Shown here: positions 8,100 through 62,432 of the stretch, in pieces
Layout: every line of letters starts with the position of its first letter
Numbering within the stretch: position 1 is the stretch's first letter
Source: Octopus sinensis
Taxonomy: Eukaryota
Reading direction: 5' to 3'
NCBI RefSeq assembly: GCF_006345805.1
Contig: NC_043010.1
Location: forward strand, 18,352,001-18,416,000
DNA length: 64,000 nucleotides
Made by a program: the position numbers and the translations under genes
The notes under the pieces: model-generated
The model's input: the letters and a program-made list of their open reading frames with translations, nothing else
Database searches by the model: none
What the model was told of the DNA's origin: nothing

Positions 8100-8505
8100 T
8101 AAGGCGGCGAGCTGGCAGAATCGTTAGCAAGCCGGGCAAAATGCTTAGCGGTATTTCGTCTGTCGTTACGGTCTGAGTTCAAATTCCGCCGAGGTCAACT
8201 TCGCCTTCATCGTTTCGTGGTCGATTAAATAAGTACCAGTCACGCACTGGGGTCGATATAATCGACTTAATCTGTTTGTCTGTCCTTGTTTGTCCTCTCT
8301 GTGTTTAGCCCCTTGTGGGTAGTAAAGAAATAGGTATTTCGTCTGTCGCTAAGTTCTGAGTTCAAATTCCGCCGAGGTCGACTTTACCATTAATCCTTTC
8401 TGGGTCGATAAATTAAGTACGAGTCAAGTACTAGAGTCGATGTAATCGACTATCACCCCTCCCCGAAATTTCAGGCCTTGTGCCTATAGTAGAAAGGATT
8501 AATTA
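8100..8505 (+). mobile_element. tRNA-derived SINE family B, two-unit form
   Basis: AAGGCGGCGAGCTGGCAGAA head, B box GAGTTCAAATTCC, GGTCGATTAAATAAGTACCAG domain, then a second unit ending TTGTGCCTATAGTAGAAAGGATT. Confidence 0.88.
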
Positions 8506-19818: not shown

Positions 19819-20065
19819 CTTTTCACTTCGAATTTTTGTGTAAACTGGTGTTGCAAGCAGAATTGGTAGAGAAACATTTGTAATGAATCAGCGAAAATAT
19901 GTTGAACGGTTTCTTTGCCCTTTTATTATGCGGATTATAGTTTACACTTCGCGACACCCACGCAACAATTTTACTGTCGTTGAAGAATGTTGGTATTAGT
20001 CTGGAATCCGTCAGTGTTGATAACCCAGAACTCAGGTTGGGTGCTTCTCTGAAAATACCTTACCT

Positions 20066-20297
20066 ATTTCTTTATTACCCACAAGGGGTTAAACACAGAG
20101 AGGACAAACAAGGACAGACAAACGGATTAAGTCGATTGCATGGACCCCAGTGCGTAACTGGTACTTAATTTATCGACCCCGAAAGGATGAAAGGCAAAGT
20201 CGACCTAGGCGGAATTTGAACTCAGAACGTAACGGCGGACCAAATACCCCTAAGCAGTTCCCCGGCGTCTTAACGTTTCTGCCAGCTCGCCGCCCTT
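20066..20297 (-). mobile_element. SINE family B, left unit
   Basis: CCTATTTCTTTATTACCCACAAGGGG...AATTTGAACTCAGAACGTAAC...CTGCCAGCTCGCCGCC. Confidence 0.88.
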
Positions 20298-27480: not shown

Positions 27481-30032
27481 CTATATAATGACTGGAAAAG
27501 CTTCGTGGGATGGGTCCCGTTATGAGGAAAAGGCCCTGTTATGATGAAAAGGGTACTAATCTAGGAATTTGCGAGATGTCGTGCAGTAATTTTTTCGACT
27601 TTTTGCGTTGCAACAGCACCACTGACATCACTACTACTTATGTCTGCCATTCCGAAAGCGGTGGAGTTTCCTTGGACAACATCAGTGGCACAGAGAGAGG
27701 AGATCTGCTTGCGGAACATCTGTCAGCCTTTCTCACAAAAAAGTACGGAGGCTACAGATAGGGATAAGGAGTTGACCGTACGTGACGGAGGCCCTTGTTT
27801 GTGGGTGCGCGCGCGTGTTTGTGTTGTATCCTTTATGAATATTCTCAAATTATAGTTGTTGTAGACAAATTGATCTGATCAAGTTGAAATCATTTCCTGA
27901 TTCCGCTTCTTCCCTAGAACTAATTTGTTCCAGATCCCTTATAAATACTCCGCAGAAACTCACGAATTTTAAAATATATTTCGTTTCCCTTAAAAATTTT
28001 AAGGACCACGTTGCGTTAGGTGCTACCCTTCAAATATTCTGGTTACCAAACTCAGCTCACAAAAATCCTGAAACGCCTTAACAAGGGTGGACTCGTTGAT
28101 TTCTCCTGGTTCAAGTTGACATTCAATGTCCAGTTGGTCAGCGACATTACTCATAAACACAAGAGTTTCGTTACGCATCGGTTGAGTGAGGTGGATAGAA
28201 AGGTTACTCATTTACCAGGAGGTCAGAAGTACTTGAATTAACTGAGCTGGACATTGTCCCCCAATGACCAAGTGATCATAGAGACACCAAACTGGCTCAA
28301 ACGGATATGTATTGACCAAGTGGTCAGAGAAATATTGCAATTTATAAATGGACGCGCAATGGCCTTCAAAGCCAAGCGGTCAGCAGAAGATACACTTACT
28401 TAAGTAGCCACTGTCCCGGTCAGTGGGACACGAGTGGACACTCAGTTGGCAAGTGTAGCAGAATAAAGGTCACTCTTTCCAATTATTGGTTTGTAAAGGA
28501 ACGGACGGCGGTCAGCAACACTTGCACGTGTGGAGGCCTTTTTTGCATGTCAAACATTGCCACCTTGCAACCAGCATCTCCACCACCATCATCATGTGCA
28601 TTGCTATAATCACAATCATCATCGCCACCACCATCATCCTCATAACCATTAACACTTCTATCCTTCCAGCCTCCACCATAAAACCCCTCCCCCATTATTA
28701 TTATTACCACCGCGCCTTAGCCGCCATCACCAATGCAACCACAAGCACCACCATCTCCACCAATAATTTTAACACCACCACAGCTACAATTACTAAAACT
28801 AAGGAACGCCCCCCCACCCCCACTGCCTATCCTCGCCTCCATTCTCACCACCCCCATCGCCACCCCCACTGCCTACCCTCGCCTCCATTCTCACCACCAC
28901 CACCACCACCACTATAACTACCGTAACCACTAGTGTCATCAACACCACCACCACCACCACTTCCCTCTTACCACCACCATCAGCACCATCCACCTCATGG
29001 CCACCCACCCAAACTTCCACACTCCTCAGCCTTCAAAGAAAGCTGGTAGAATCTACAGAAGAAGTTCTTATTGCCCGTGGGGCCGCAATCACACACACAC
29101 ACACATACGCTAGTCTTACACAACCAACTACAATGGCCATCACATAAGCACACACATACACAACATGCACACACACACATGTACACCAACACACACTAGT
29201 CTTACACAACTTACTGCGATGGCTGCTGCTAAACACATACATACACCCTTACATATTACACACGCACACACATACACACTTATACATACGCAAACAACAA
29301 TAGCCACTACACACACATAAACCAACAACAATAGCTGCCACACACACGCACACACATAAACTCACGCCCGCACGCACATACATTCACGCACGCACACACA
29401 ACAATGGCTGCCACACGCACACTCACACACACACACACAAACAATGGATGTCAAACACACACACGCACACTCACGCACACACACATACACTCACGCACAT
29501 ACACTCACGCACGCACTCACCACAATGGCTGCCACACACACACACGCACACTCACGCACACACACATACACACGCACACACAACCCAACAACAATGGCTG
29601 CCGCACACGTGTTCAGGCGAATGCTTCTCCTCGTTGTTCGACTTCAATATTTTTGTTTTCAAGTGAAGCAGGTCACTGCATGTTGTTGTTGTTGTTGGTA
29701 TTGTCGTCGTTGTTGTTGTTCTTCTCCTTTTACTATTGTTGTTGATAGTGCTGTTATTGTAATTGTCCATATTGTTGCTTGTGTCTGTTGCCATTTTTGT
29801 TGCTGTTATTGTTGTTGTAGTGGTGGCGGTGGTGAAGGCGGCGGCGGCGGCGGCGGTGGCAGCGGCGGTGGTGGTGGTTGTTACTGCTGTTGTTGTTGTT
29901 GTTGTTGTTGTTGTTGCCATTGTCGTTATGTATTTACCAACAATGAGGAACATGAAAACAATGTTTATTTTCTCTTATAACAGTAAGACTTTTACACGTG
30001 TTTAATGCGTGTGAATTCATGTATATGTATAT

Positions 30033-30432
30033 ATTTCTTTACTACCCACAAGGGGCTAAACATAGAGGGGACAAACAAGGACAGACAAGGGGATTAAATC
30101 GATTACAGCGACCCCAGTGCGAAACTGGTACTTAATTTATCGACCCCGAAAGGATGAAAGGCAAAGTCGACTTCGGCGGAATTTGAACTCAGAACGTAAC
30201 GACAGACGAAATACCTATTTCTTTACTACCCACAAGGGGCTAAACACAGAGTGGACAAACAAAGACAGACAAAGGGATTTAGTCGGTTACATCGACCCCA
30301 GTGCGTAACTGGTACTTAATTTATCGACCCCGAAAGGATGAAAGGCAAAGTCGACCTTGGCGGAATTTGAACTCAGAACGTAACGACAGACGAAATACCG
30401 CTAAGCATTTCATCCGGCGCGCTAACGTGTCT
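30033..30432 (-). mobile_element. SINE family B, tandem units
   Basis: Two near-identical units (TTTCTTTACTACCCACAAGGGGCTAAAC...GAACTCAGAACGTAACGACAGACGAAATACC). Confidence 0.9.
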
Positions 30433-31080
30433 GCTAGTATATATGCTTGCTGCGCGCGTGTATGTCTATATATAAATGTGCTTGCTGCGAGTTTGTGTGT
30501 GTGTCGAGGTTTCACGTGGTCTATGTAAGTGTATTTTCTTTTTCAATATCTTGTCAATCTATAATTGATTGAGTATTGATCCCTAGAAACCCGTCGATGT
30601 ATCACACTAAATTCAGTTCGAGACGTCGAGTTGGCTGAATGGTCAGCAACCCAGGACAAAATACTTAACGACATTTCTACCAATTTTACGTTCTGAGTTC
30701 AAATTCTGCTGAAGCCGACTATGCCTTTTATCATTTCGGGATCGATGAAATAAGTACCAGTTACGAACTGGCTCGACTAGCCCCCCTCCCACCCCAAAGT
30801 TTCCGGCCCATTTACGCACAACAGATTAGACGTTTGACAAAAAATTCCTAACATCGGGCTACAACGAGTAACCTCAGCTGTCAAGAACCTTCCTAAGTAT
30901 CCTGGCTCTCCGTAATAAAACTGGTTTCTGGAGCTTCACTATGTTAAGTTTTGTGGTTGTTTCCTGTTTTTCAAATTTTCCGAGATAGTTCCCAATGCAC
31001 CAATAACTACAGGGATGCATTTTACCCGCACTTAAATTTTATCTCTGTAAATTAATGGCAATTATTATTATAGTTATATT

Positions 31081-31313
31081 AAGGCGGCGAGCTGGCAGAA
31101 ACGTTAGCATGCCGGGCGAAATGCTTAGCGGTATTTCGTCTGCGTTACGGTTGTGAGTTCAAATTCCGCCGAGGTCGACTTTGCCTTTCATCCTTTCGGG
31201 GTCGATAAATTAAGTACCAGTTACGCACTGGAGTCGATGTAATCGACTTAATACCTATGTCTGTCCTTGTTTGTCCCCTCTGTGTTTAGCCCCTTTGGGT
31301 AATAAAGAAATAG

Positions 31314-31318
<5 letters not shown>
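31081..31318 (+). mobile_element. SINE family B, left unit followed by (TTA)n
   Basis: Near-consensus head to GGGTAATAAAGAAATAGG. Confidence 0.9.
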
Positions 31319-31360
<42 letters not shown>

Positions 31361-31690
31361 GAGCGAGAGAGCAGTGCCCGCCATCAAAGTGACACTGGGG
31401 TAAAATATACGAAGCCCAGTATACCCATCATGACTAACCGTCTGATAAGGGTATATACCAGGCACATGCATCACGACCATATGTGTGTGACATGGTGAAC
31501 TCATGTCAAGATAAACAACGCATGACCTTGCAGGTGGGACCCAGTTAGAATTTTCTTCGGGTTGAGTAGCCCATTCCGCTCAAAAGAGGTCTCTGAATAA
31601 GGGTTGTTTAAGGATGTTGAACGAAACACTCATGTTTCCAGAGGTGAATTATCCAAACCTCAAAGAGTTTATTTCAGATATTCTCATTTT
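31361..31690 (-). mobile_element. Family D element copy abutting (TTA)n
   Basis: GAGCGAGAGAGCAGT...CCATCAAAGTGACAC...ATACCCATCATGACTA...CCCAGTTAGAATTTTCTTC is the reverse complement of 63200-63511. Confidence 0.75.
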
Positions 31691-31778
31691 AAAAATCATC
31701 TCTGGCTAATCGTTGAGAGGACGCTGCTGTTGTCTTGGTGGGGATTTGCGCTCTCTGAGTGCTCTAGTTTACTTTGTT

Positions 31779-31814
<36 letters not shown>

Positions 31815-31923
31815 GAGTGAGCGAGTAGTGCATGCCATCAAAGTGACACTGGGGTACAAGTATACGAAGTTCAATAAACCCATCATGACTACCCGTCACA
31901 ATACACCCAGGCACATGCATCAC
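31815..31923 (-). mobile_element. Short family D copy abutting (TTA)n
   Basis: Same terminus (GAGTGAGCGAGTAGT...CCATCAAAGTGACACTGGGGTA); internal deletion; ends where a SINE begins. Confidence 0.7.
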
Positions 31924-32305
31924 AGGTGAGCTGGCAGAACCGTTAGCACGCCGGGCGAAATGCTTAGCGGTATTTCGTCTGCCTTTATGTTCTGAGTTCA
32001 AATTCCGCCGAGGTCGACTTTGCCTTTCATCCATTCGGGGTCGATTGAATAAGTACAAGTTACGCACTGGGGTCGATATAATCGACTTAATCCCTTTGTC
32101 TGTCCTTGTTTGTCCTCTCTGTGTTTAGCCCCTTGTGGGTAGTAAAGAAATAGGTATTTCGTCTGTCTTTACGTCCTGAGTTCAAATTCCGCAAAGGCCG
32201 ACTTTACCTTTCATCCTTTCGGGGTCGATAAATTAAGTACCAGTTGCGTACTAGGGCCTCCTCCCCCAAAATGTCGGGCGTTCTGCCTATAGTAGAAAAG
32301 ATTAT
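31924..32305 (+). mobile_element. SINE family B, two-unit form
   Basis: Left unit plus right unit ending GCCTATAGTAGAAAAGATTATT. Confidence 0.88.
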
Positions 32306-45309: not shown

Positions 45310-45419
45310 TACATATATGTATGAATATATCTATATCTACCTACCTATCTATCTATCTACCTACCTACCTTTCCATCTACATACCTACTACTTACCTACT
45401 ACTTATCTACGTACCTACT

Positions 45420-45650
45420 TATTTCTTTACTACCCACAAGAGGCTAAACACAGAGAGGACAAACCAGGACAGACAAATGGATTAAGCCGATTATATCGAC
45501 CCCAGTGCGTAACTGGTACTTATTTAATCGACCCCGAAAGGATGAAAGGCAAAGTCGACCTCGGCGGAATTTGAACTCAGAACGTAACGGCAGACGAAAT
45601 ACAGCTAAGCATTTCGCCCGGCGTGTTAAAGATTCTGCCAGCTCGCCGCC
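45420..45650 (-). mobile_element. SINE family B, left unit
   Basis: Near-consensus reverse-complement copy. Confidence 0.9.
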
Positions 45651-49039: not shown

Positions 49040-49620
49040 CGGGGGTGGGGTCGAGCTGGCAGAAACGTTAGCACAGCGGGCGAAATGCATAGCAGTATTT
49101 CGCCTGCCGCTACGTTCTGAGTTCAAATTCCGCCGGGGTCGACTCTGCCTTTCATCTTTTCGGGGTCAATTAAATAAGTAGCACTTACGCACTGGGATCG
49201 ATATAATCGACTTAATCCGTTTGTCTGTCCTTGTTTGTCCCCTCTTTGTTTAGCCCCTTGTGGGTAGTAAAGAAATAGGTATTTCGCCTGTCGCTACGTT
49301 CTGAGTTCAAATTCCGCCGAGGTCCACATCCTTTCGGGGTCGATAAATTAAGTACCAGTTGTGTACTGGGGTCGATCTGATCGACTGTCCCCACTCCCCA
49401 CAAAATTCAGGCCTTGTGCCTATAGTGGAAAAGAATCGTTACAGCGCCGAACAGAATGTTTAGCGGCATTTCATCCTTTAAGTTACGTGTGCGAATTCCG
49501 CCGAGGTCGATTTTGCCTTTCATCCTTTCGAGATCGATTAATAAAAATCAATTGAACACTGAGGTCGATGTAATTGACTTACCCACCATCCCAAAACTGC
49601 TGGCCTTGTGCCAAAATTTG
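49040..49620 (+). mobile_element. SINE family B, two-unit form plus a third diverged unit
   Basis: GAGCTGGCAGAAACGTTAGC head; three occurrences of the AATTCCGCCG(A/G)GGTC...GTCGAT module. Confidence 0.85.
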
Positions 49621-49789: not shown

Positions 49790-50545
49790 CGGGATAATCA
49801 TATGCAGTTTAATGCTGAAAAGTTTCAAGCCCTGCGCTACCAGCGTCCGAAACTGAATATGAAATTTACAGGGTACACCGGTCCACAGGGAATTTCAATC
49901 CCAGGGCCTAAGTCAGTGTGGGACCTGGGTATCGACATGAGTGGTGATACCTCTTTCCAAGTGCACATTACCAGGATGGCGACAAAGTGCAGACGACTGG
50001 CAGGATGGATCCTAAGAACATTCAGAACTAGAGATAAGGAAACCATGATGGTCCTCTGGCAGACATTCGTCCTCAGCCGCCTGGATTACTGCCCACAGCT
50101 ATGGTCACCCGCCAGTGTGAAATTAACAGCGGACCTTGAAGCAATCCAGAGAAGATTCACAAAGAAGATCGTCTCTTTGCAACATCTCAGCTACTGGGAA
50201 AGGTTGAAACAGCTAAGACTCTACTCCCTGGAGAGAAGACGGGAGAGGTATGCAGTAATATATGTCTAGAAGATCCTGGAAGGAATTGTGCCAAATTTTG
50301 GCATTGAAAGCTATACCAATACCAGAAAGGGACGACACTGCACAATGCCAAAGATCCCAGCAACGCCATCGCGCTTCAGGACCAGTTACTACAACAGCCT
50401 GGATTTCAGGGGCCCACGGCTTTTTAATATTCTCCCAAAGAGCCTGAGGAACCTGCACAAAGTAGATGAAGGCGTTTTAAAATCAAAGCTGGACCTCTTC
50501 CTGTCGAGATTCCCAGATGAACCTACATCACAGCAATAGGTGCAA
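49790..50545 (+). mobile_element. Fragment of a second copy of the same CR1-type LINE (C-terminal ORF2)
   Basis: ORFs 49802..50269 (MQFNAEKFQALRY...SRLDYCPQLWSP...LERRRERY) and 50288..50539 (FRGPRLFNILPK...PDEPT) are collinear with ORF2 at 53001-53815; ends at a (TA)n tract without the 3' tail. Confidence 0.93.
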
Positions 50546-50552
50546 ATGAGGG

Positions 50553-50632
<80 letters not shown>

Positions 50633-50989: not shown

Positions 50990-52915
50990 AAGTACTTGTA
51001 CATCAACTACGCGCGTTTCATGGCTGAATTAGGACTATATAAAATCATGTAAGAAACCATATCCAAGTTCATTAGAACGAGAAAATGATTTTAGTCCCAA
51101 AAGCAAGTTAATCATCAGGTCAAATTCCTAAAAAAAAATCCCTAAAAACTAAAAATTTAACTTACCTCATAAGGAATTTAAAAAATAAGGAATAAATATA
51201 TATATATATATAAAGAAACAAACCTGTAATGTAACCCCTAAGTTAAAGACGTTAATATTATTAAAAGTTACGAACTAAAATATTCAAATAGAGTATTATT
51301 GTGAACATGATTAATTCATTATGGAGAAGGTAAATAAACGTAACTACGTGTTAGTGTATAAAGTTAATAAAAGACGTATGTTGATATCGTTTAGAATAAA
51401 TTTTGAAAGACATGACTTATCTGCCGGCGAACTACTCTAGATTAAACCGAAATAAGTGTACTTTAGCATTTATACTCAAAAGTAACGTGATAAATATGGC
51501 GTCCATTACCCAGAGATAAATACATATTATATTTACTATAATAAAATTATCGACAAAGTATATTGTTTATTGAGTATTTAAAATACTTAAAACCTTTAGA
51601 TCTACAAAAAACAATAACTATAACACGAACGAAATTTATGTGCTACGTAAATAATGCTATAAAACATTGTAAGAATGCACATATCGTTGAATTCGTTATC
51701 AGTAAAAAAGTAGTTATTTATTCTAATTATATATAATTATGTAATGTTTGAAGTGTATTTTAAGCTAATTATATGTATTTAACGCTACTAATCATAACTA
51801 TAAATTGGTAACTTTTCATGGGTTTTAAATAAATCAATACATTGTCTATACTTATATAAATAATTTAATTTATGCCACATTTAATATTACGTTCATCTTG
51901 GAAGTTAATCAATTTTTTTAATAGCTGATAATATCTCAAAGCAAAATTTACTTCCTATTCTATACGATTTAGCCTTACAAACTATTTCCCATTTTAAATC
52001 GTATTTTATTCTTTCACATTTAAGTTCCCAAATGTATTTACTTAATACCTGTTCTTAAAAGAATTCATATGTTGGGCCACCCGTGATTTAATTTTATTGG
52101 AAGTCGATCCTATGTAAATAGTATTTATGTTATCATTATTACTATTATTATTATTATCATTCAAAATCACTATACATTTATATAATACGTCCTCATTAAA
52201 ATTTACATTTAGTCTTATCTCTACAATTACAATCAATTGTATTCTGGTCTCCATTGGAGGTATTAATTTATTATTTTAAAACTTATTTAATTAAAATTTA
52301 TTAAGGCTGAAATGATATTGCCAACATAATTATTGGTGGAAAAAATTTATTGCTTGAAAATATGTCCTTCTTTTTATGGTTCTCTTTAATAAATGTCTTA
52401 ATTATATTTAAAATCTCTTTGATAATGTTAGTTTTAACCTGCATCCCATAGGGAATTATTAGCCATATTTTATTCTTATTATTATTACTTTGGGGTTTAT
52501 TGTTCATATTACTAACTACATCGGACTTCAGATGATTCTTAATGTTGTGTTTATTGTTATAGAAGGTGTATGCATCATTTAAATTATCTTTTAAATTATA
52601 ATTATATTTAGAATTGTTGAAAAATTTAATACTATTATTATATCCCGCCTTATGAAGCGCTTCATTATAATGTGGTACATGTTTATTGAATATGTCATAG
52701 TTGGAAGAAAGTAATGAAATTCGATTTCCTATATTATTTGCTAACGCTTTCTTAATGGAAGGTGGATGGTTACTCTTAGCATTAATATATTTCAGGTTTT
52801 TGCTAATTTTATAGAAATGTTGGGTTATAACTGTTATAAAGTTAACATTTACATCTAAGTAATTAACATTGCTATTTACGTTATAAATTGTAATCCTAAT
52901 CTTACTGTTCAATAC
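50990..52915 (-). mobile_element. 5'-truncated, AT-rich Penelope-like element (RT C-terminus + GIY-YIG endonuclease + 3' region), possibly Naiad-like
   Basis: ORF 52301..53158 has NYLDVNV...YINAKSNHPPSIKK...RISLLSS...YNEALHKAGY...IWLIIPYGMQVKTNI; ORF 52042..52254 has IYIGSTSNKIKSRVAQHMNSFKN; hand translation below 52040 gives KYIWELKCERIKYDLKWEIV. Clade assignment from recalled motifs; downstream boundary uncertain. Confidence 0.85.
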
Positions 52916-53000
52916 ATATATATATATCCTTAAAATCCTTAAAAATGTTTTAGCCCGAAGGCCGCGGCCATGCTGGGGCACCACCGCTGAATGAGCTACA

Positions 53001-55990
53001 CTAGTTTGTGAATCCACCTCTGATACGTGGCACTTGATCAACAAGGGAGTTCGATGCTGCTGCCCGCATCCGTGTCTCCTGTCGTGAGGTAGGTTCATCT
53101 GGGACTCCCAACAAGAAGAGATCCAGTTTAGTTTTAAAGAAACCCACATCCACACCATGTAAGTCTCTCAGGCATTTAGGGAGGATGTTAAAGAGCTGTG
53201 GTCCTCTGAAACCCAAGCTGTGCAGTATCTGGACCTGTATTTTGATGGTGATGTTGGAATCCTGGCACCACGCAGCGGCGCCCCGTTCTGCGGTTGGAGT
53301 AACTTTGAATGCCAAAGTTTGGGACAAGACCCTCCAGGATTTTCCAGATGTATATCACTGCATATCTCTCCGCCTCCGCTCCAGGGAGAAGAAGAGGTTA
53401 ATACCTTCAGTCTTTCCCAGTAGCTGACATTTGCATTGAGACGATTTTCTTTGTGTAGCTTCTCTGAGTTGCTTCGAGTTCTGCTGTTTGTTTTATATTG
53501 TGTGGTGACCAAAGTTGGGAGCAGTAGTCCAAGCGGCTGAGGACAAATGTTTTCCATAGGACCATCAGTGTCTCCTTCTCTCTTGTTCTGAAAGTTCGGA
53601 GAATCCATCCAGCTAGCCGTCTGCATTTTATCACCAGATTAGCAATATGCATTTGGAAAGATGCATCATTGCTCATGTCAATGCCCAGGTCACGCACTGA
53701 TTTTGACTCAGGGATTGCAATTCTTCCTGGGCCAGTGTATCCAGTCTTCACGTCATTTACTTTGTGTGCCAGTAGCGCAGGGCCTGGAACTTACCTGCAT
53801 TAAACTGCATGTTGTTGTCCTCAGCCCACCTGTATATTGTGTCCAGCTCATGTTGCAGATGCGCAATATTTTCAGGGTTTTGTATTGCGTGGGAGACTTT
53901 TGTGTCATCTGCATAGCTAGCAAGGGTGGTCATCGTAGCAACTGAAGGCATGTCTGAAAGGGCCACTATGAACATCAGTGGCCCCAAGACAGTGCCCTGT
54001 GGGACACCGCTTGTTATTTGCGTTTCCCTGGAGGTGGCTCCATTGCTCACAACTGCCTGTTTCTGTCTTTTAGGAGGAAGTTGTGCAGCCACTCTCCAAG
54101 TTTCCCGCCTATGCCGAGACCACGCAGTTTGTGACAGATCATACCATGGTCGACTTTGTCAAAGGCTTTTGCAAAGTCAAGATATATTACATCCACATTT
54201 GAGCCATTTAGTAGCTGTTTCAACACCAGTCATAGTGTTGCAGGAGCTGTGTTAGGCAGCCTCTACCTGGTCGAAATCCATGCGGATGGGGTCAGACAGT
54301 AAGTCATTTTCTTCAAGGAACATGATTAGTTTCTTACGGACTATTCGTTCCATGACTTGCTGATGTGTGAGGTCAGAGAGATAGGCCTATAATTTTTAGC
54401 ATCTGCTCTGCTACCTCCCTTATGGATAGGGCATATTACCCCCTCTTTCAGTTTGACTGGGAGCTTACCACTTGCAAGAAAGCTCTGAAAAAGAAGCTGT
54501 AGCGGTTTGCAGGGCTCGTTTGCACGATTTGAGAAGGATCGCTGGGAATCCATCAGGTCCAGCAGCTGAGTTTGTGCAATCTCATCAATGGCTAGTGTGA
54601 TATCATCTTCTTCGATGTTGATGTACTCAATTTTTGTCTCTTTGGTCGCTGGTAAGTGGCAAAGAATTCTTCTGGGTTGTTACTTGCCTGTGTCTAGAGG
54701 TGTAGTGAACACACTTTGGAACTGTTCATTCAGTATTTCACTTATCCTCGTGGATTTCCTGTGAGAGAGCCATCTTTTTGGAAGAGAGGTCCTATTCTCT
54801 GGTGCACTGTGGCTGTCTCTTTGGCAAACTTAAAGAAAGCTTTAGGGTTTGATTTTATATTTTCTATTACCCAAGCTTCTTTATCTGCTCTCTCCTTTTC
54901 ATGGGACTGATGTAGACTTTTCTCAGTTTCCATTAGCATTCTTTCGAGCCGAGACTTCTCACCACTTTTGGTGTGCTTGCTCAGGCGGTTTGCAATCCTT
55001 GTCCGTCGTCTCATAAGAATCCTCCTTTCTCTAGGGATCCTGTTTTTGTCTTGTGTGTGCTGGCCCTGCACATTGGGACATATTTGTCACATATGGCTTG
55101 TATTATGGACATGAAGTGTTTGTGTTTCATGTTTATGTCCGGTGTGGAGAGACATTCAGGCCAATCCTGTTTGAGGATCTCTTTCTCAATCGACTTCCAG
55201 TTGGCTTTATGAAAGTTAAGTTGGAGAGATGGTGGGTGCTTCGTATAGGCTGTGTGTGTCTGCGGGGGCTTTTGTTCCATACATAGACAGCTCTATTATG
55301 TTGTGATCCGAGATCATTGTCGGCATCACATTAACATTATGGATAATATCCATATTGTTTGTAAAGCAGAGATCCAGTATATTATCTGCCCTTGTTGGTT
55401 GCAGAACTATTTGCTCCATGAAAGAGATATTTGTGAGATGGAGCAGGGACTCCACCTGTGCCTGCTGATGGTGTGTCATCCCTGGGAGCATCTGCCCCCA
55501 GGCCATTCCACATTGGGGAGGTTAAAGTCACCATGAAGAATACACTGTTGTGCTGTTCAAGGTTGGTGAGGACTTCTCTATTTTTGTTAGGCAGTCTTCA
55601 AACATGCCTGAGTGTTTGGGGCGTCTGGTGGGCGATATGTAGTGCATATGACGATATTCAGTTGTCTTATGTGTACAATTTGAGTTTCACATACTGAGTT
55701 TGAATATGACAGCAGGACTGGGGCGTGAGGTCATCTCGGATGTACATTGCAACTCCACCATGGCTCCTCCCTTTTCTATCTGTGCGTATGACTGCATATT
55801 GCGGCATGTGTATTCTGCATCACCTATATCGGGTTCAAGATGCGTTTCTGTGAGTGCCATGCATATAGCTTGATTGCATGTCACAAGGTCTCTCAGGAAT
55901 GAAATTTTCTTTTTACAGTTTCCGCGCAGCAGCCCTCCTACATTCAGTAGAAATATTTTTGTGGTGTGTGTGTTGGTGTTGGTGTCTGTG
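53001..55990 (-). pseudogene. LINE ORF2 pseudogene: apurinic endonuclease + reverse transcriptase
   Basis: ORF-track pieces 55687..56091 (KIFLLNVGGL...ALTETHLEPDIGDAE), 55216..55506 (PTRADNILDLCFTN), 54742..55071 (NIKSNPKAFFKFAK), 54341..54553 (PIHKGGSRADAKNYRPISLTSH), 53757..54092 (SGVPQGTVLGP, YADDTK), 53407..53751 (SRLDYCSQLWSP), 53001..53327 (GPQLFNILPK). LDFAKAFDKVDH read by hand near 54150-54185. Start coordinate approximate. Confidence 0.95.
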
Positions 55991-56839
55991 GTGGCCATCC
56001 TGCATCTGTTGGAGGTGGCCTTATGTGGTGGTAGTTCCAGCTTTGTGCTTGTAGCCAGGTCAGCTGCTGAACAATTTTTTGTGCCATGCACAAAAAAGAC
56101 TGCTGTTCAGCTGCCGCCCTTCTCACATCTGGGTGAAGCTGGCCACCTGTTGGGTTTCCGCGCACCACATCTGCATACCGTCTTTCAGTAGTGGTCAGTG
56201 CGCTTTTTCCCTTCTTTTAACTTTTTGTTTTTGTTCTCCCTGAGGGAGGGACCTCTGTCTCGCGTCCGTGCGGTTTTGGTAGGCCTCCGATGTGCAAAGC
56301 GACAGTTTGCACCTTCAACGCCGTACCAGCAGTCCCCCCTCAGGTAGAATTTGCAGGTGTTTCTTTCCTGCCCTTACAGTTTTTGCTGGGGGTCCCTCTG
56401 CTGTCTCTGGACAGGGCTTCCTTTAGCCTTGATTCTGTCACCCTTACCTCCTGCTTCCCATCAATTCCAGGGTGCCTTTCCTTTCTTGCGGCCATCGCAC
56501 CTCTTTGGTCTTCAGTTGTGGTGTTGGAAGCTGGACATGTGTCATCGTTTCCCTTTGTTCCAGGCTTCTCCATTTGGCTCTGGATGCTTTCCTCATCCTT
56601 TTGGCCCTCCCTGCTGCCGTCACCTCCCAGGATGATGTCCAGGGTGTCCATATGTTGCCTGATAGAGCGTACGAACGGATAACTTCTCTCTTCTTTCGCT
56701 CTATCTGGGCGGTGGTTCTCGAAAAATTGTTGCTTTTCAGCGCCGCAGCAATAATGTCGTTCGGCGAGTCGTCCTCAGCGATCTTCCAAGCGCGGACGAA
56801 CAATTGCACCTCTCGCAGACCAGACCAGTTTCTTGCCAT
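55944..56839 (-). pseudogene. LINE ORF1 pseudogene (about 300 codons over four frames) with N-terminal Myb/SANT-like trihelix domain and a CCCH zinc finger
   Basis: ATG at 56839: MARNWSGLREVQLFVRAWK...IIAAALKSNNFSRTTAQIERKKREVIRSY, continued after a frameshift by MDTLDIILGG. Hand translation of 56355-56290 gives CKFYLRGDCWYGVEGANCRFAH (C-x7-C-x8-C-x3-H). Confidence 0.75.
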
Positions 56840-56859
56840 TTTCTTCTAGTGAAATATAG

Positions 56860-57730
56860 GAACAGAGAGAGAGATAGAGAAGAGAGATATGAGATGGAGA
56901 GGGAGAGAGAGAAAGGAGAAAAGCCAGGGGGGATAGAGAGAGAGACGAGGGGATTTTCCTGAGAGAAGAGAGAAAGAGAGAAAATAAGAGGAAAAAAGAG
57001 AAAGGTGAGGAATGGCAGGTCAGCAGGGGAGAGTGAGCGGGATAGAGGTGTAGTAGAAAGGGACAGGGTGGAAAAGTGAGACAAGAGGGTGGACCCTAGG
57101 GGGGGGGGGCAGGGAGAAGAAAGGCGGAGAGATAAAATGGAGAGGAAGAGAGAGATGAAATGGAGAGGGAGAGAGAGAGAGGGCAGGATAGAGGTACCAG
57201 GGAGTGAAGTAAAGGGACAGAGAGGGTGGTGGAGGAAGGAGACAGAGAGAGGAAAAAAGAGACAGGGGGTGGTGAGCCTTAGAGGGAACAGGGAGAGGAA
57301 AGGTAGGAAGAAAAAAGGGGGGAAGAGGAAGAGAGGGGGCGCAACAGAGTGTAGTAAAGGGACAGGGAGGGTGGTGTAGAGAAAGAAATAAGGGGACAGA
57401 AGGGGAAGAGGAAAAGGGGTTTGACCTGTGAAGGAGCGGAGAGGAAAGAGGCAGAGAGAGGGAGGGGGAGTAACAGAGAGAGAGAGAGAGAAAGAGGGCG
57501 GTATATAGATACAAGAGAGAATGAGTGAAGTTGAGGAACTGAGAGAGGGGGTGAGGTGAGAGAAAGTTGATCTGAGAGAGATGCAGAAAGAGAAACGATT
57601 GCAGAGGGAGAGAGAGGGAGGAGGGGAGAGTGAGAGCGGAAATAGAGGGTCTGGTGGATGGGGAGACAGATAAGGTATAAACTGTATGAGAGAGATAGAA
57701 ATAGAAATGTAAGAAAGAGAGGGAGAGATT
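56860..57730. repeat. Purine-rich (GA/GGA) low-complexity tract upstream of LINE ORF1
   Basis: Almost purely A/G on the plus strand, i.e. a long pyrimidine tract on the LINE sense strand. Confidence 0.9.
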
Positions 57731-58543
57731 ATAAAGATAGAATAGCGCGTATTTTTATATCTTTTTAATTATTATTTTCTGTTTGAAAGAACACTAATGA
57801 TAACAAATAATAAAAATGTATGAGAGAGATAGAAATAGAAATGTAAAAAAGAGAAAGAGAGTGCGTGGCAGGCACGGAGGACGAAATTATAAAGATTATA
57901 AAGATAGAATACCGCGTATTTTTATATTTTTATGTCTTTTTTTAATTTTTTTTTAATTATTTTCTGTTTGAAAGAACACTAATGATAACAAGATAAATAA
58001 TATCTTACCTTACCGGCTGAGAGAGAGTACTTACGTGATTCCTTTTTATAAGAAAGGAAGATAGATAGACAAGACAGACCTTTTATATTCCTCCCCAAGC
58101 GCACTTTGTAAACAAAAGGGGTTTGAGTTTCGATTTAGCACATGCAACAGTTTCACGATACTTTCTATATTTTCCTAAGCGATTTGGTATTAAGCAGCAA
58201 ATTTTTCAGAGGCTTTTTTCAGAACACGCAGATATACATCAAAACGAAAATATCCTTCTCAAAAATACTGTGTCTTGTTGATTCACAGACGAAGAATAAA
58301 ATTCACTTCGATTTCGGGAAGTAACACACGTGCGTTTTAACACGTGTATTCGCGAGTATGTTCTAGTTGCAAATACTACATCAAAAGTGAAAATATTCTT
58401 CTCAAATACAGTGACTTGTTGTACTATCACTTATATTCGCTTTGCAGACAATTTCGCTTCTGATAACATCGATCTCTGGAAGGACTTCTTTAATATTTAG
58501 GAGAGACACGTTAACACACTTGTTGTTAGTTCAGCGCCATCTT

Positions 58544-58544
58544 G

Positions 58545-58600
<56 letters not shown>

Positions 58601-62213: not shown

Positions 62214-62432
62214 GGTTTGTTTGTCCTCTCTGTGTTTAGCCCCTTGTGGGTAGTAAAGAAATAGTTATTTCGTCTGTCTTTACGGTCTGAGTTCAAATTC
62301 CACCGAGGTCGACTTTGCCTTTCATCCTTTCGGGGTCGACAGATTAAGTACCAGTTGCGTACTGGGGTCGATCTGATCGACTGGCCTCCACCCCCTTAAA
62401 AATTTCTGGCCTTCTGCCTATAGTAGAAAAGG
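62214..62432 (+). mobile_element. SINE family B, 5'-truncated two-unit form
   Basis: End of left unit (TTTAGCCCCTTGTGGGTAGTAAAGAAATAG) joined to right unit ending GCCTATAGTAGAAAAGG. Confidence 0.87.

What the first reader, a model, noticed from the sequence alone, without database searches (positions are those of the whole stretch)
55944..56839. LINE ORF1 apparently built from a trihelix Myb/SANT-like domain plus a CCCH zinc finger
Seen: the ORF directly upstream of the APE-RT ORF2 starts MARNWSGLREVQLFVRAWK...IIAAALKSNNFSRTTAQIERKKREVIRSY and, after one frameshift, continues MDTLDIILG. A third frame encodes CKFYLRGDCWYGVEGANCRFAH. Known: W...IAxxL...RTxxQ...K...Y followed by a F/YxxLDxILG helix is the pattern of Myb_DNA-bind_4 / trihelix domains, typical of PIF/Harbinger accessory proteins and their domesticated derivatives. 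CR1/L2/Jockey-group ORF1s usually carry RRM+CCHC, PHD, esterase or L1-like domains. Inference: this family may have captured a DNA-binding module from a Harbinger-like source, giving an ORF1 type I do not recall being described.
Basis: partly seen in the sequence, partly recalled or inferred. Interest (0 to 1): 0.8.

Follow-up and report, generated by a model that had tools for sequence, protein, structure and literature searches.

The report
Octopus LINE with unusual ORF1 protein
This is a dead copy of an octopus jumping gene (a LINE retrotransposon) whose first protein has a domain make-up I found described in no paper searched: a small three-helix domain that weakly resembles Myb/SANT DNA-binding domains, one CCCH zinc finger and a long C-terminal helix; intact relatives exist in other octopods.

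Summary
All three peptide strings are present on the minus strand at 56839-55944. This is the frameshifted ORF1 of a 5.6-kb LINE (about 58543 to 52926).

- **Linkage is not chance.** Seven other copies carry the same ORF1 ahead of an APE-RT ORF2: five in Octopus vulgaris and O. sinensis, and two on unnamed contigs. A fully intact element in Argonauta hians does too (ORF1 291 aa, ORF2 1021 aa).
- **Ancestral ORF1 is one reading frame of about 300 aa.** It holds an N-terminal three-helix domain, a disordered linker, one C-x7-C-x8-C-x3-H finger, a (S/T/R)YADxV motif and a C-terminal helix.
- **CCCH finger is confirmed.** It scores 25 bits against a Pfam cut-off of 20.5. Related LINEs whose ORF1 has a PHD-like N-terminus share this finger, so only the N-terminal module is new.
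- **The Myb/SANT call is weakly supported.** PF13837 is the only recurring Pfam hit, but it is sub-threshold (best 19.6 bits against 27). hhalign to the GT-1 trihelix gives P=0.006. Foldseek finds nothing significant.
- **Capture from a Harbinger transposon has no support.**
- **Incidental finding.** Copies sit inside (TA)n or (CA)n microsatellites.

Verdict: a real feature, a new ORF1 variant of a known kind of element, of moderate interest.

The parts
58545..58570 (.). (TA)n microsatellite abutting the 5' end of the element; putative target site
   Evidence: junction read-out. The same holds at the 5' junctions of L002, L001, L010 and L004. The background is 2-4% of positions.
56840..58543 (-). 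5' UTR of the full-length element (about 1.7 kb), pyrimidine-rich on the sense strand, with degenerate direct repeats of about 140-190 nt
   Evidence: The 5' terminus AAGATGGCGCTGAAC.. is shared with the O. sinensis copy L002 at 7634. Internal repeats are shown.
55944..56839 (-). ORF1, disrupted here by private frameshifts; conceptual product about 300 aa
   Evidence: intact homologous ORF1s in L005, L006 and L011.
56622..56839 (-). N-terminal three-helix domain (NW..E..L..AW...PN.I.aaLK.n.F.RT.aQIERKK.EF.RSY.LI..H...LD.IL), weakly Myb/SANT-like (PF13837-like). It contains a private 3-nt insertion near the start and a private 1-nt deletion near 56669.
   Evidence: Alignment; Pfam; AlphaFold; hhalign.
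56356..56621 (-). Low-complexity, K/E/T-rich linker, predicted disordered
   Evidence: pLDDT below 50 for the corresponding part of the homolog P0029; poorly conserved in the alignment.
56290..56355 (-). Single CCCH zinc finger, C-x7-C-x8-C-x3-H (CKFYLRGDCWYGVEGANCRFAH)
   Evidence: PF00642 E=1.7e-5, 25 bits against a cut-off of 20.5. The spacing is conserved in the family and in the first finger of the L008/L009 ORF1s.
56157..56183 (-). RRYADVVRG, the local form of the conserved (S/T/R)YADxV motif
56049..56117 (-). Conserved C-terminal helix (AAAEQQSFLCMAQKIVQQLTWLQ), a candidate oligomerisation helix
   Evidence: Conserved in P0015, P0027 and P0029. AlphaFold predicts a helix at 236-276 with pLDDT about 91 in P0029.
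53001..55998 (-). ORF2 (APE endonuclease plus reverse transcriptase). It overlaps ORF1 by 55 nt and is broken here by several frameshifts and stops.
   Evidence: RVT_1 hit. tblastn with the near-intact L010 ORF2 shows pieces in all three frames. YADD box at 53915-53898.
52926..53000 (-). 3' UTR with conserved hairpin core GGTGCCCCAGCATGGCC (52982-52966) and tail AAGGATTTTAAGGAT
   Evidence: The same core is present in the Argonauta element.
52912..52925 (.). (AT)5GTAT run directly after the 3' tail; target microsatellite or tail extension
   Evidence: all five 3' ends found are followed by TA-rich microsatellite.

Best explanation
Window 58543-52926 (minus strand) is a full-length but dead copy of an octopod APE-type LINE. 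I place it provisionally in the CR1/L2 group.

**Shown: the architecture of its first ORF (56839-55944), four conserved parts**
1. An N-terminal domain of about 75 aa with three helices.
2. A disordered basic linker.
3. One C-x7-C-x8-C-x3-H zinc finger.
4. A (S/T/R)YADxV motif followed by a helix of about 40 aa.

ORF1 overlaps ORF2, which encodes APE plus RT.

**Inferred: the mechanism**
- The ORF1 protein binds the element's RNA in cis through the CCCH finger and the basic linker. This would be the job done by CCHC knuckles or RRMs in other LINEs.
- It self-associates through the C-terminal helix.
- It uses the N-terminal helical domain as a nucleic-acid or chromatin contact module. This domain sits where the closest relatives carry a PHD-like finger.

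**The N-terminal domain** is most likely a very divergent Myb/SANT-like domain of the PF13837 (trihelix) kind. This rests on weak, sub-threshold evidence.

**Family history.** The family arose by replacement of the N-terminal ORF1 module. The CCCH finger was kept from the PHD-type ancestor.

**Insertion sites.** Copies insert into microsatellites that match the element's 3' tail: (TA)n in Octopus and (CA)n in Argonauta. Whether ORF1 contributes to that choice is untested.
For: **Linkage and multicopy nature**
- L001 is 92% identical, L002 87%, L004 92%, L010 97.9%, and the divergent L003 72-79%.
- L005 and L006 have an intact ORF1 followed by APE.
- The Argonauta locus L011 has an intact 291-aa ORF1 and a 1021-aa ORF2.

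**Single ancestral ORF**
- L010 and L004 read through from the linker to the stop.
- L005, L006 and L011 are fully open.

**Architecture**
- Alignment of 25 proteins.
- AlphaFold on P0029: residues 1-80 at pLDDT 80-97 with helices 3-19, 26-39 and 46-82; the finger at about 76-80; helix 236-276 at about 91.

**CCCH finger**
- PF00642, 25 bits against 20.5; 22 bits for the conceptual ORF1.
- The same spacing and E of 1e-5 to 1e-10 against the first finger of the L008/L009 ORF1s.

**Myb/SANT-like assignment**
- PF13837 is the only recurring family: 5 of 25 members and consensus E=0.0012.
- hhalign to GT-1 (2jmw) gives P=0.0058 over 34 columns in the helix 2 to helix 3 register, against c-Myb 0.32 and homeodomain 0.49.

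**Module swap**
- ORF2 relatives at 48% identity have an ORF1 with a 2A-like motif, a PHD-like finger and 3 CCCH fingers.
- Those ORF1s give no hit to the N-domain HMM.

**Microsatellite insertion**.
Against: **Against the Myb/SANT assignment**
- PF13837 never reaches its gathering score (at most 19.6 bits against 27).
- hhalign probabilities are 3-6%.
- Of the canonical Trp triad only the first Trp is kept.
- A profile search of PDB sequences found only chance uS8 matches and not GT-1.
- Foldseek against PDB and BFVD gave nothing with E below 0.3. GT-1 appears at rank 21 with E=9.3.

**Other limits**
- The clade is not established by an RT phylogeny.
- RNA binding, oligomerisation and any DNA binding are inferences.
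- The insertion-site sample is small: 5-6 junctions per side, in a genome where 2-4% of positions lie next to (TA)4.
Confidence: 0.75

Rival explanations
1. The N-terminal domain is a lineage-specific helical domain with no common ancestry with Myb/SANT. The PF13837 similarity would come from convergence or composition in a basic helix. Its role could be protein-protein or RNA contact rather than DNA binding.
For: All Pfam hits are below the gathering score. Foldseek gave no significant match. The PDB profile search missed GT-1. The profile search of 1.84 billion proteins found no bona fide Myb/SANT protein. The second and third Trp of the triad are absent.
Against: The same single family is hit over nearly its full length (profile positions 2-70 of 89) by five divergent members and by the consensus, with E down to 0.001. 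hhalign prefers GT-1 (P=0.006) over c-Myb and a homeodomain, in the expected register. The predicted fold has three helices with a long basic third helix.
Confidence: 0.3
2. This is the first reader's reading: the domain was captured recently from the Myb-like accessory gene of a PIF/Harbinger transposon.
For: Only the general fact, from established knowledge, that PF13837-type domains are typical of Harbinger accessory proteins. No tool result supports it.
Against: The HMMER profile search returned 25 proteins, all small ORF1-like, and no Harbinger-type or host Myb protein at E<1e-3. The similarity to PF13837 is remote, not recent. The domain is already shared by families as divergent as Octopus and Argonauta (about 34% identity).
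Confidence: 0.05
3. The Myb-like ORF and the APE-RT ORF lie side by side by chance, or the ORF is a host gene fragment.
For: None beyond the fact that the window copy is broken.
Against: The same order and the same overlap of ORFs occur in at least 8 other loci from at least 3 species, including a fully intact element. 5'-truncated copies start inside ORF1 and run to the common 3' end.
Confidence: 0.01
4. The CCCH finger is expressed by programmed ribosomal frameshifting, because it lies in another frame in both the window and L001.
For: The window and L001 both place the finger in the -1 frame relative to the upstream part.
Against: L010, L004, L005, L006 and L011 have it in frame. The spacer lies in an A-rich run that differs by 1 nt between copies. 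The breaks are therefore decay.
Confidence: 0.02

Closest known systems
CR1/L2-group LINE ORF1 with an N-terminal PHD finger (type III of Khazina & Weichenrieder 2009; Metcalfe & Casane 2014, PMC4120745)
   Same: - It is a bicistronic APE-RT LINE.
- A small N-terminal reader or binding domain sits at the start of ORF1.
- ORF1 is built from modules.
- The 3' tail is a microsatellite-type repeat.
- The nearest ORF2 relatives found here (L008, L009) have a PHD-like finger and share the same CCCH finger type.
   Different: - The PHD finger is replaced by a three-helix, weakly Myb/SANT-like domain.
- There is one CCCH finger instead of three.
- There is no 2A-like motif.
- Neither CCCH nor Myb/SANT is listed among ORF1 domains in that survey.
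Myb_DNA-bind_4 / trihelix domains (PF13837; Arabidopsis GT-1, PDB 2jmw; Harbinger Myb-like accessory proteins)
   Same: - It has three helices with a long basic third helix.
- It shares the pattern G(F/Y).R(S/T)..Q...K......Y followed by ..LD.I.
- PF13837 is the only Pfam family hit, and hhalign gives P=0.006 to GT-1.
   Different: - It scores below the Pfam threshold.
- The second and third conserved Trp are missing.
- There is no significant structural or PDB sequence match.
- It is encoded by a retrotransposon ORF1, not by a transcription factor or a DNA-transposon accessory gene.
Myb-like domains in other LINE proteins: the R2 N-terminal zinc finger plus Myb, and the TRAS/SART ORF2 Myb-like region (from established knowledge, not tested here)
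   Same: A Myb-type helical domain carried by a non-LTR retrotransposon protein. In R2 it binds the target DNA, and those elements are target-specific.
   Different: Those domains lie in the RT-bearing protein (the single ORF or ORF2) of the R2 and R1 clades and are canonical Myb. Here the domain is in ORF1 of a CR1/L2-like element and is only remotely Myb-like.
Type I ORF1 (Jockey, I: RRM plus CCHC knuckles)
   Same: It is a zinc-finger-bearing ORF1 presumed to coat the LINE RNA.
   Different: It has one CCCH finger rather than CCHC knuckles. No RRM is detectable by Pfam or in the AlphaFold model.
Microsatellite-targeting LINEs (for example the Togen (TG)n elements in PMC4640811; from established knowledge also Dong (TAA)n and Waldo, Mino, Kibi, Koshi)
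   Same: Copies are flanked on both sides by one microsatellite type.
   Different: The known cases are mostly restriction-like-endonuclease clades or the R1 clade. Here the preference is only suggested by a handful of copies, and it may reflect pairing between the 3' tail and the target rather than protein recognition.

Membership tests
APE-type bicistronic LINE (non-LTR retrotransposon) | ORF2 with an APE endonuclease and a reverse transcriptase | tested here: met
   RVT_1 on a window piece. Exo_endo_phos_2 plus RVT_1 on ORF2 relatives. The whole ORF2 maps onto window 55959-53004.
APE-type bicistronic LINE (non-LTR retrotransposon) | ORF1 directly upstream on the same strand, in many copies, with 5'-truncated copies sharing a common 3' end | tested here: met
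Myb/SANT-like DNA-binding domain, Pfam PF13837 (Myb_DNA-bind_4 / trihelix) | Score at or above the Pfam gathering threshold (27 bits) | tested here: not met
   Best scores: 19.6 bits (family consensus, E=0.0012), 19.2 bits (P0029), 17.2, 16.5 and 15.6 bits. The window's own broken copy gives no hit.
Myb/SANT-like DNA-binding domain, Pfam PF13837 (Myb_DNA-bind_4 / trihelix) | Three-helix bundle superposable on solved trihelix or Myb structures | tested here: inconclusive
   AlphaFold gives three confident helices. Foldseek has no significant hit; GT-1 (2jmw) appears at rank 21 with E=9.3 and TM 0.43 on the target. hhalign to the GT-1 sequence gives P=0.0058 and probability 6%.
Myb/SANT-like DNA-binding domain, Pfam PF13837 (Myb_DNA-bind_4 / trihelix) | Three regularly spaced Trp or aromatic residues forming the core | tested here: not met
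   Only the first Trp (NW) is conserved. The positions of the second and third are Ile and Lys in the family consensus.
Myb/SANT-like DNA-binding domain, Pfam PF13837 (Myb_DNA-bind_4 / trihelix) | Binds DNA | not testable with these tools
   This needs EMSA or a similar assay on the recombinant domain.
CCCH zinc finger (Pfam PF00642 and relatives) | Score above the gathering threshold, with three Cys and one His conserved | tested here: met
   25.0 bits against 20.5 on the window's own sequence. The C-x7-C-x8-C-x3-H ligands are conserved in P0015, P0023, P0027, P0029, L010 and L011.
CR1/L2 group of LINEs (Jockey superfamily sensu Metcalfe & Casane) | The RT domain groups with CR1/L2 references in a phylogeny | not tested
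   No labelled reference RT set was available. The supplements looked at were unlabelled or not held.
CR1/L2 group of LINEs (Jockey superfamily sensu Metcalfe & Casane) | The 3' end is a short tandem repeat or microsatellite rather than poly(A), with a conserved 3' UTR hairpin | tested here: met
   Tail (AAGGATTT)2 in Octopus and (ATACAAG)2 in Argonauta; shared core GGTGCCCCAGCATGGCC.
CR1/L2 group of LINEs (Jockey superfamily sensu Metcalfe & Casane) | PHD-type ORF1 and/or a 2A-like motif in close relatives | tested here: inconclusive
   L008 and L009 show the C4HC3 pattern and GVE(Q/K)NPGP. Pfam PHD_4 gives only E=0.023.
Known ORF1 types I-IV (RRM+CCHC; coiled coil+RRM+CTD; PHD; esterase) | Presence of an RRM, CCHC, Transposase_22, PHD or esterase domain | tested here: not met
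   None appears in the Pfam scans of 25 members or of the conceptual ORF1. The AlphaFold model has no RRM-like sheet. It would fall under type V (unclassified).
PIF/Harbinger Myb-like accessory protein as donor | Closer to Harbinger Myb-like proteins than to other proteins | tested here: not met
   The profile search of 1.84 billion representative proteins gave only ORF1-like hits.

The most novel reading that the evidence does not exclude
The N-terminal Myb-like domain of the ORF1 protein is a sequence-specific DNA-binding module. It would steer the LINE ribonucleoprotein to microsatellite targets, (TA)n in Octopus and (CA)n in Argonauta. That would be an ORF1-based targeting mechanism, previously unknown for APE-type LINEs, in which the module takes the place of the PHD chromatin reader of related elements.
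Probability: 0.12. Interest if true: 0.75.

Novelty: new variant of a known kind. Interest (0 to 1): 0.5.

Why it matters
ORF1 is the least understood LINE protein, and it is known to evolve by swapping modules.

- This finding adds a module combination absent from the published ORF1 classifications that I could search: a helical, possibly Myb/SANT-like domain, a CCCH finger and a C-terminal helix, with no RRM or CCHC.
- Close relatives show which part was swapped. The N-terminus changed, and the CCCH finger was kept.
- Intact copies exist in Argonauta hians and a near-intact one in O. vulgaris, so the protein can be expressed and tested.
- If the N-domain binds DNA, the family would link ORF1 to target choice in elements that sit in microsatellites. 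That is relevant to the very microsatellite-rich and TE-rich cephalopod genomes.
- If it does not bind DNA, this is simply one more lineage-specific ORF1.

Tried and rejected
- **Pfam on the window's own broken pieces.** No Myb hit; intact relatives were needed.
- **AlphaFold with a 4-sequence alignment.** Poor model, pLDDT 61, and Foldseek on it returned nothing.
- **Foldseek with the good model.** No significant match against PDB or BFVD.
- **Profile search of PDB sequences.** Only chance matches to ribosomal protein uS8, E about 0.01. I reject these because the model is helical where uS8 has a strand.
- **Second word-indexed protein search with the 25-sequence alignment.** It returned only 3 proteins.
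- **N-domain in the relatives' PHD-type ORF1.** None found.
- **RT clade placement.**
  - Names of ORF2 homologs gave none beyond 'hypothetical protein'.
  - The supplement of Metcalfe & Casane is only a list.
  - The supplement of Odon et al. is not held.
  - The gastropod alignments are unlabelled.
- **Literature searches.** Searches for Myb, SANT or CCCH in LINE ORF1 found nothing relevant. The octopus LINE paper (PMC9115989) concerns an RTE element, not this family.
- **Tandem Repeats Finder on the 5' UTR.** It saw only two short arrays. The longer degenerate repeats needed a self-BLAST.
- **Whole-window repeat finder.** It gave only microsatellite and SINE noise and no second copy of ORF1.


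Full report
**1. What is in the window**

On the minus strand, an ATG at 56839 opens MARNWSGLREVQLFVRAWKIAEDDSPNDIIAAALKSNNFSRTTAQIERKKREVIRSY. From 56669 a second frame reads RSIRQHMDTLDIILGGDG... A third frame holds CKFYLRGDCWYGVEGANCRFAH at 56355-56290. The second frame then resumes with RRYADVVRG (56183-56157) and AAAEQQSFLCMAQKIVQQLTWLQ (56117-56049), and it stops at 55946-55944.

ORF2 starts at 55998 (MATTDTN..KIFLLNVGG..), 55 nt before the ORF1 stop. It runs to 53003-53001, with the YADD box at 53915. ORF2 is scattered over all three frames, so this copy is dead.

**2. Host and other copies**

The repaired ORF1 hits only Octopus vulgaris and O. sinensis proteins. Fetching their loci gave these independent copies:

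| Locus | Species | Identity to the window copy | Note |
|---|---|---|---|
| L001 | O. vulgaris | 92% | 5'-truncated in the 5' UTR |
| L002 | O. sinensis | 87% | full length |
| L004 | O. vulgaris | 92% | fragment |
| L003 | O. vulgaris | 72-79% | divergent subfamily |
| L010 | O. vulgaris | 97.9% | 5'-truncated inside ORF1 |

- All have the ORF1 region followed by APE-RT.
- The nucleotide alignment shows that the window's first frame break is a private 1-nt deletion. The other copies read KKREFIRSYALIRQHMDTLDIILGG.
- In L010 the linker, CCCH finger, RRYADVVRG, C-terminal helix and stop form one open frame. L004 does the same apart from one private extra G.
- The ancestral Octopus ORF1 was therefore a single ORF of about 300 aa. 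The idea of a shifted-frame finger is rejected.

**3. Wider family**

A HMMER profile of the N-terminal domain, searched against 1.84 billion representative proteins, found only 25 proteins with E<1e-3. All are small and ORF1-like. They come from O. vulgaris and from unnamed ENA or Logan contigs.

- Three are full length (289-371 aa) and share the four-part architecture.
- On contigs L005 and L006 the intact ORF1 is immediately followed or overlapped by an APE domain homologous to the window's.
- The best-named ORF2 relatives are from Argonauta hians, at 61-62% identity.
- In A. hians, locus L011 carries a fully intact element: ORF1 of 291 aa (98% identical to P0029) and an open ORF2 of 1021 aa that overlaps it.
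- Linkage is therefore established across at least two octopod families, including a probably functional element.

**4. Domain identities**

*CCCH finger*
- PF00642 gives 25 bits against a cut-off of 20.5 on the window sequence itself.
- The C-x7-C-x8-C-x3-H spacing is conserved.

*N-terminal domain*
- PF13837 (Myb_DNA-bind_4) is the only family that recurs. It hits 5 of 25 members (best E=0.0017) and the family consensus (E=0.0012, 19.6 bits).
- The hits cover profile positions 2-70 of 89.
- They always stay below the 27-bit gathering score.
- AlphaFold with the 25-sequence alignment gives a confident domain: pLDDT 80-97, with helices 3-19, 26-39 and 46-82.
- Foldseek against PDB and BFVD has no significant match. 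The hits are generic helix-turn-helix folds, with GT-1 at rank 21 and E=9.3.
- A profile search of PDB sequences gave only chance uS8 matches.
It gives 0.32 for c-Myb R2R3 and 0.49 for the Antennapedia homeodomain.
- Only the first of the three canonical Trp residues is present.
- I read this as a probable but unproven remote Myb/SANT-like relationship, at roughly 60-65%.

*Other domains*
- No RRM, CCHC, esterase or Transposase_22 domain is detectable.

**5. Which part is new**

ORF2 relatives at about 48% identity (marine metagenome contigs L008 and L009) have an ORF1 of about 600 aa. It carries:
- a 2A-like GVE(Q/K)NPGP motif;
- a C4HC3 PHD-like finger;
- three CCCH fingers;
- a C-terminal helical region.

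Their first finger has the same spacing as the octopod finger and aligns with it at E=1e-5 to 1e-10. The N-domain HMM finds nothing in them. The CCCH finger therefore belongs to the wider lineage, and the octopod families differ by their N-terminal module. This is consistent with the modular ORF1 evolution described by Metcalfe & Casane 2014. Their survey lists CCHC, RRM, PHD, esterase, Tnp22, coiled coil and zf/lz, and never mentions CCCH, Myb or SANT. Other literature searches found no such ORF1.

There is no evidence for a Harbinger donor.

**6. Element anatomy and insertion sites**

- The 5' terminus (AAGATGGCGCTGAAC, window 58543) is shared with the O. sinensis copy. This gives a 1.7-kb 5' UTR with degenerate direct repeats of 140-190 nt.
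- The 3' UTR has a conserved hairpin core, GGTGCCCCAGCATGGCC, and an (AAGGATTT)2 tail.
- All five 5' junctions examined abut (TA)n or TA-rich microsatellite: two at the full-length 5' terminus, two 5'-truncated copies and the L004 fragment. All five 3' ends are followed by TA-rich microsatellite. The background is 2-4% of positions.
- The Argonauta element has an (ATACAAG)2 tail and (CA)n on both sides.
- This suggests insertion into microsatellites. It could reflect endonuclease preference, pairing between tail and target, or, speculatively, the ORF1 N-domain.

**7. Mechanism**

*Shown*
- The architecture, its conservation and the linkage to ORF2.

*Inferred*
- The CCCH finger and basic linker bind the LINE RNA.
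- The C-terminal helix mediates self-association.
- The N-domain contacts DNA or chromatin, in the place of the relatives' PHD finger.

**8. Clade**

The CR1/L2 group is suggested by three observations:
- the repeat-type 3' tail;
- the 2A-like and PHD-like ORF1 of relatives (2A-like motifs are reported in the Rex1, Crack, L2, L2A, CR1 and Ingi clades; PMC3708506);
- the absence of any Pfam domain beyond APE and RT in ORF2 relatives.

No RT phylogeny could be run.

**9. Verdict**

- It is a new variant of a known kind, of moderate interest (0.5).
- Intact elements in Argonauta make the open questions testable.

Noticed in passing
window 58545-58570 and 52912-52925; L001 about 7860 and 11947; L002 about 7620 and 12915; L010 about 5950 and 9670; L011 3760-3810 and 8450-8462: Copies of this LINE lineage are flanked on both sides by one microsatellite type: (TA)n for the Octopus family and (CA)n for the Argonauta element. 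Two related LINEs sit head to tail in the same TA/TACA microsatellite in L001. The background chance of being next to (TA)4 is 2-4%.
   Followed up: partly
window 3930, 10041, 16069, 32939, 33934, 38992, 43912 (plus 52966 in the LINE itself): The 3' UTR hairpin core GGTGCYCCAGCATGGCC occurs 8 times in the window (expected 0.01). Seven occurrences lie in SINE-like repeats ending ...GCAGTCAAATGACTGAAACAAGTAAAAGA, often next to microsatellites. This looks like a SINE family sharing its 3' tail with this LINE lineage.
   Followed up: partly
window 56840-58543 (minus strand): The 5' UTR is 1.7 kb long and pyrimidine-rich, with degenerate direct repeats of about 140-190 nt (for example 57478-57347 and 57335-57202). 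It differs in length from the O. sinensis copy and is reminiscent of monomeric LINE promoters.
   Followed up: partly
window 49793-50554 (+ strand): A fragment of a related LINE family: the ORF2 C-terminus, 70% amino-acid identity to the L010 ORF2.
   Followed up: no
L007 8001-8990: An internally deleted derivative in O. vulgaris. A divergent ORF1 (N-domain, degenerate finger, SYADAV motif, C-terminal helix) is fused in frame to the last 60 or so residues of ORF2, followed by the 3' end.
   Followed up: no
L005 1178-1834; L006 about 880-1172: In these two intact relatives the ORF2 frame has no ATG between the preceding stop and the APE domain, and it overlaps or abuts the ORF1 stop. This suggests non-canonical initiation or re-initiation of ORF2. 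The Octopus and Argonauta elements do have an ATG in the overlap.
   Followed up: no
L008 523-2385; L009 2-1765: Marine-metagenome relatives (48% ORF2 identity) have a 590-620 aa ORF1 with a hydrophobic N-terminal stretch, a 2A-like GVE(Q/K)NPGP motif, a PHD-like C4HC3 finger and three CCCH fingers. CCCH fingers in LINE ORF1 are not mentioned in the ORF1 surveys I could search.
   Followed up: partly
window 8108-8464, 20061-20286, 30028-30437, 31083-32284, 45416-45650, 49047-49409, 62217-62395: Several families of repeats of about 180-330 nt occur in both orientations (families D13-D19 and I1-I5). They are probably SINEs, and the window is also extremely rich in TA, CA and TACA microsatellites.
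   Followed up: no
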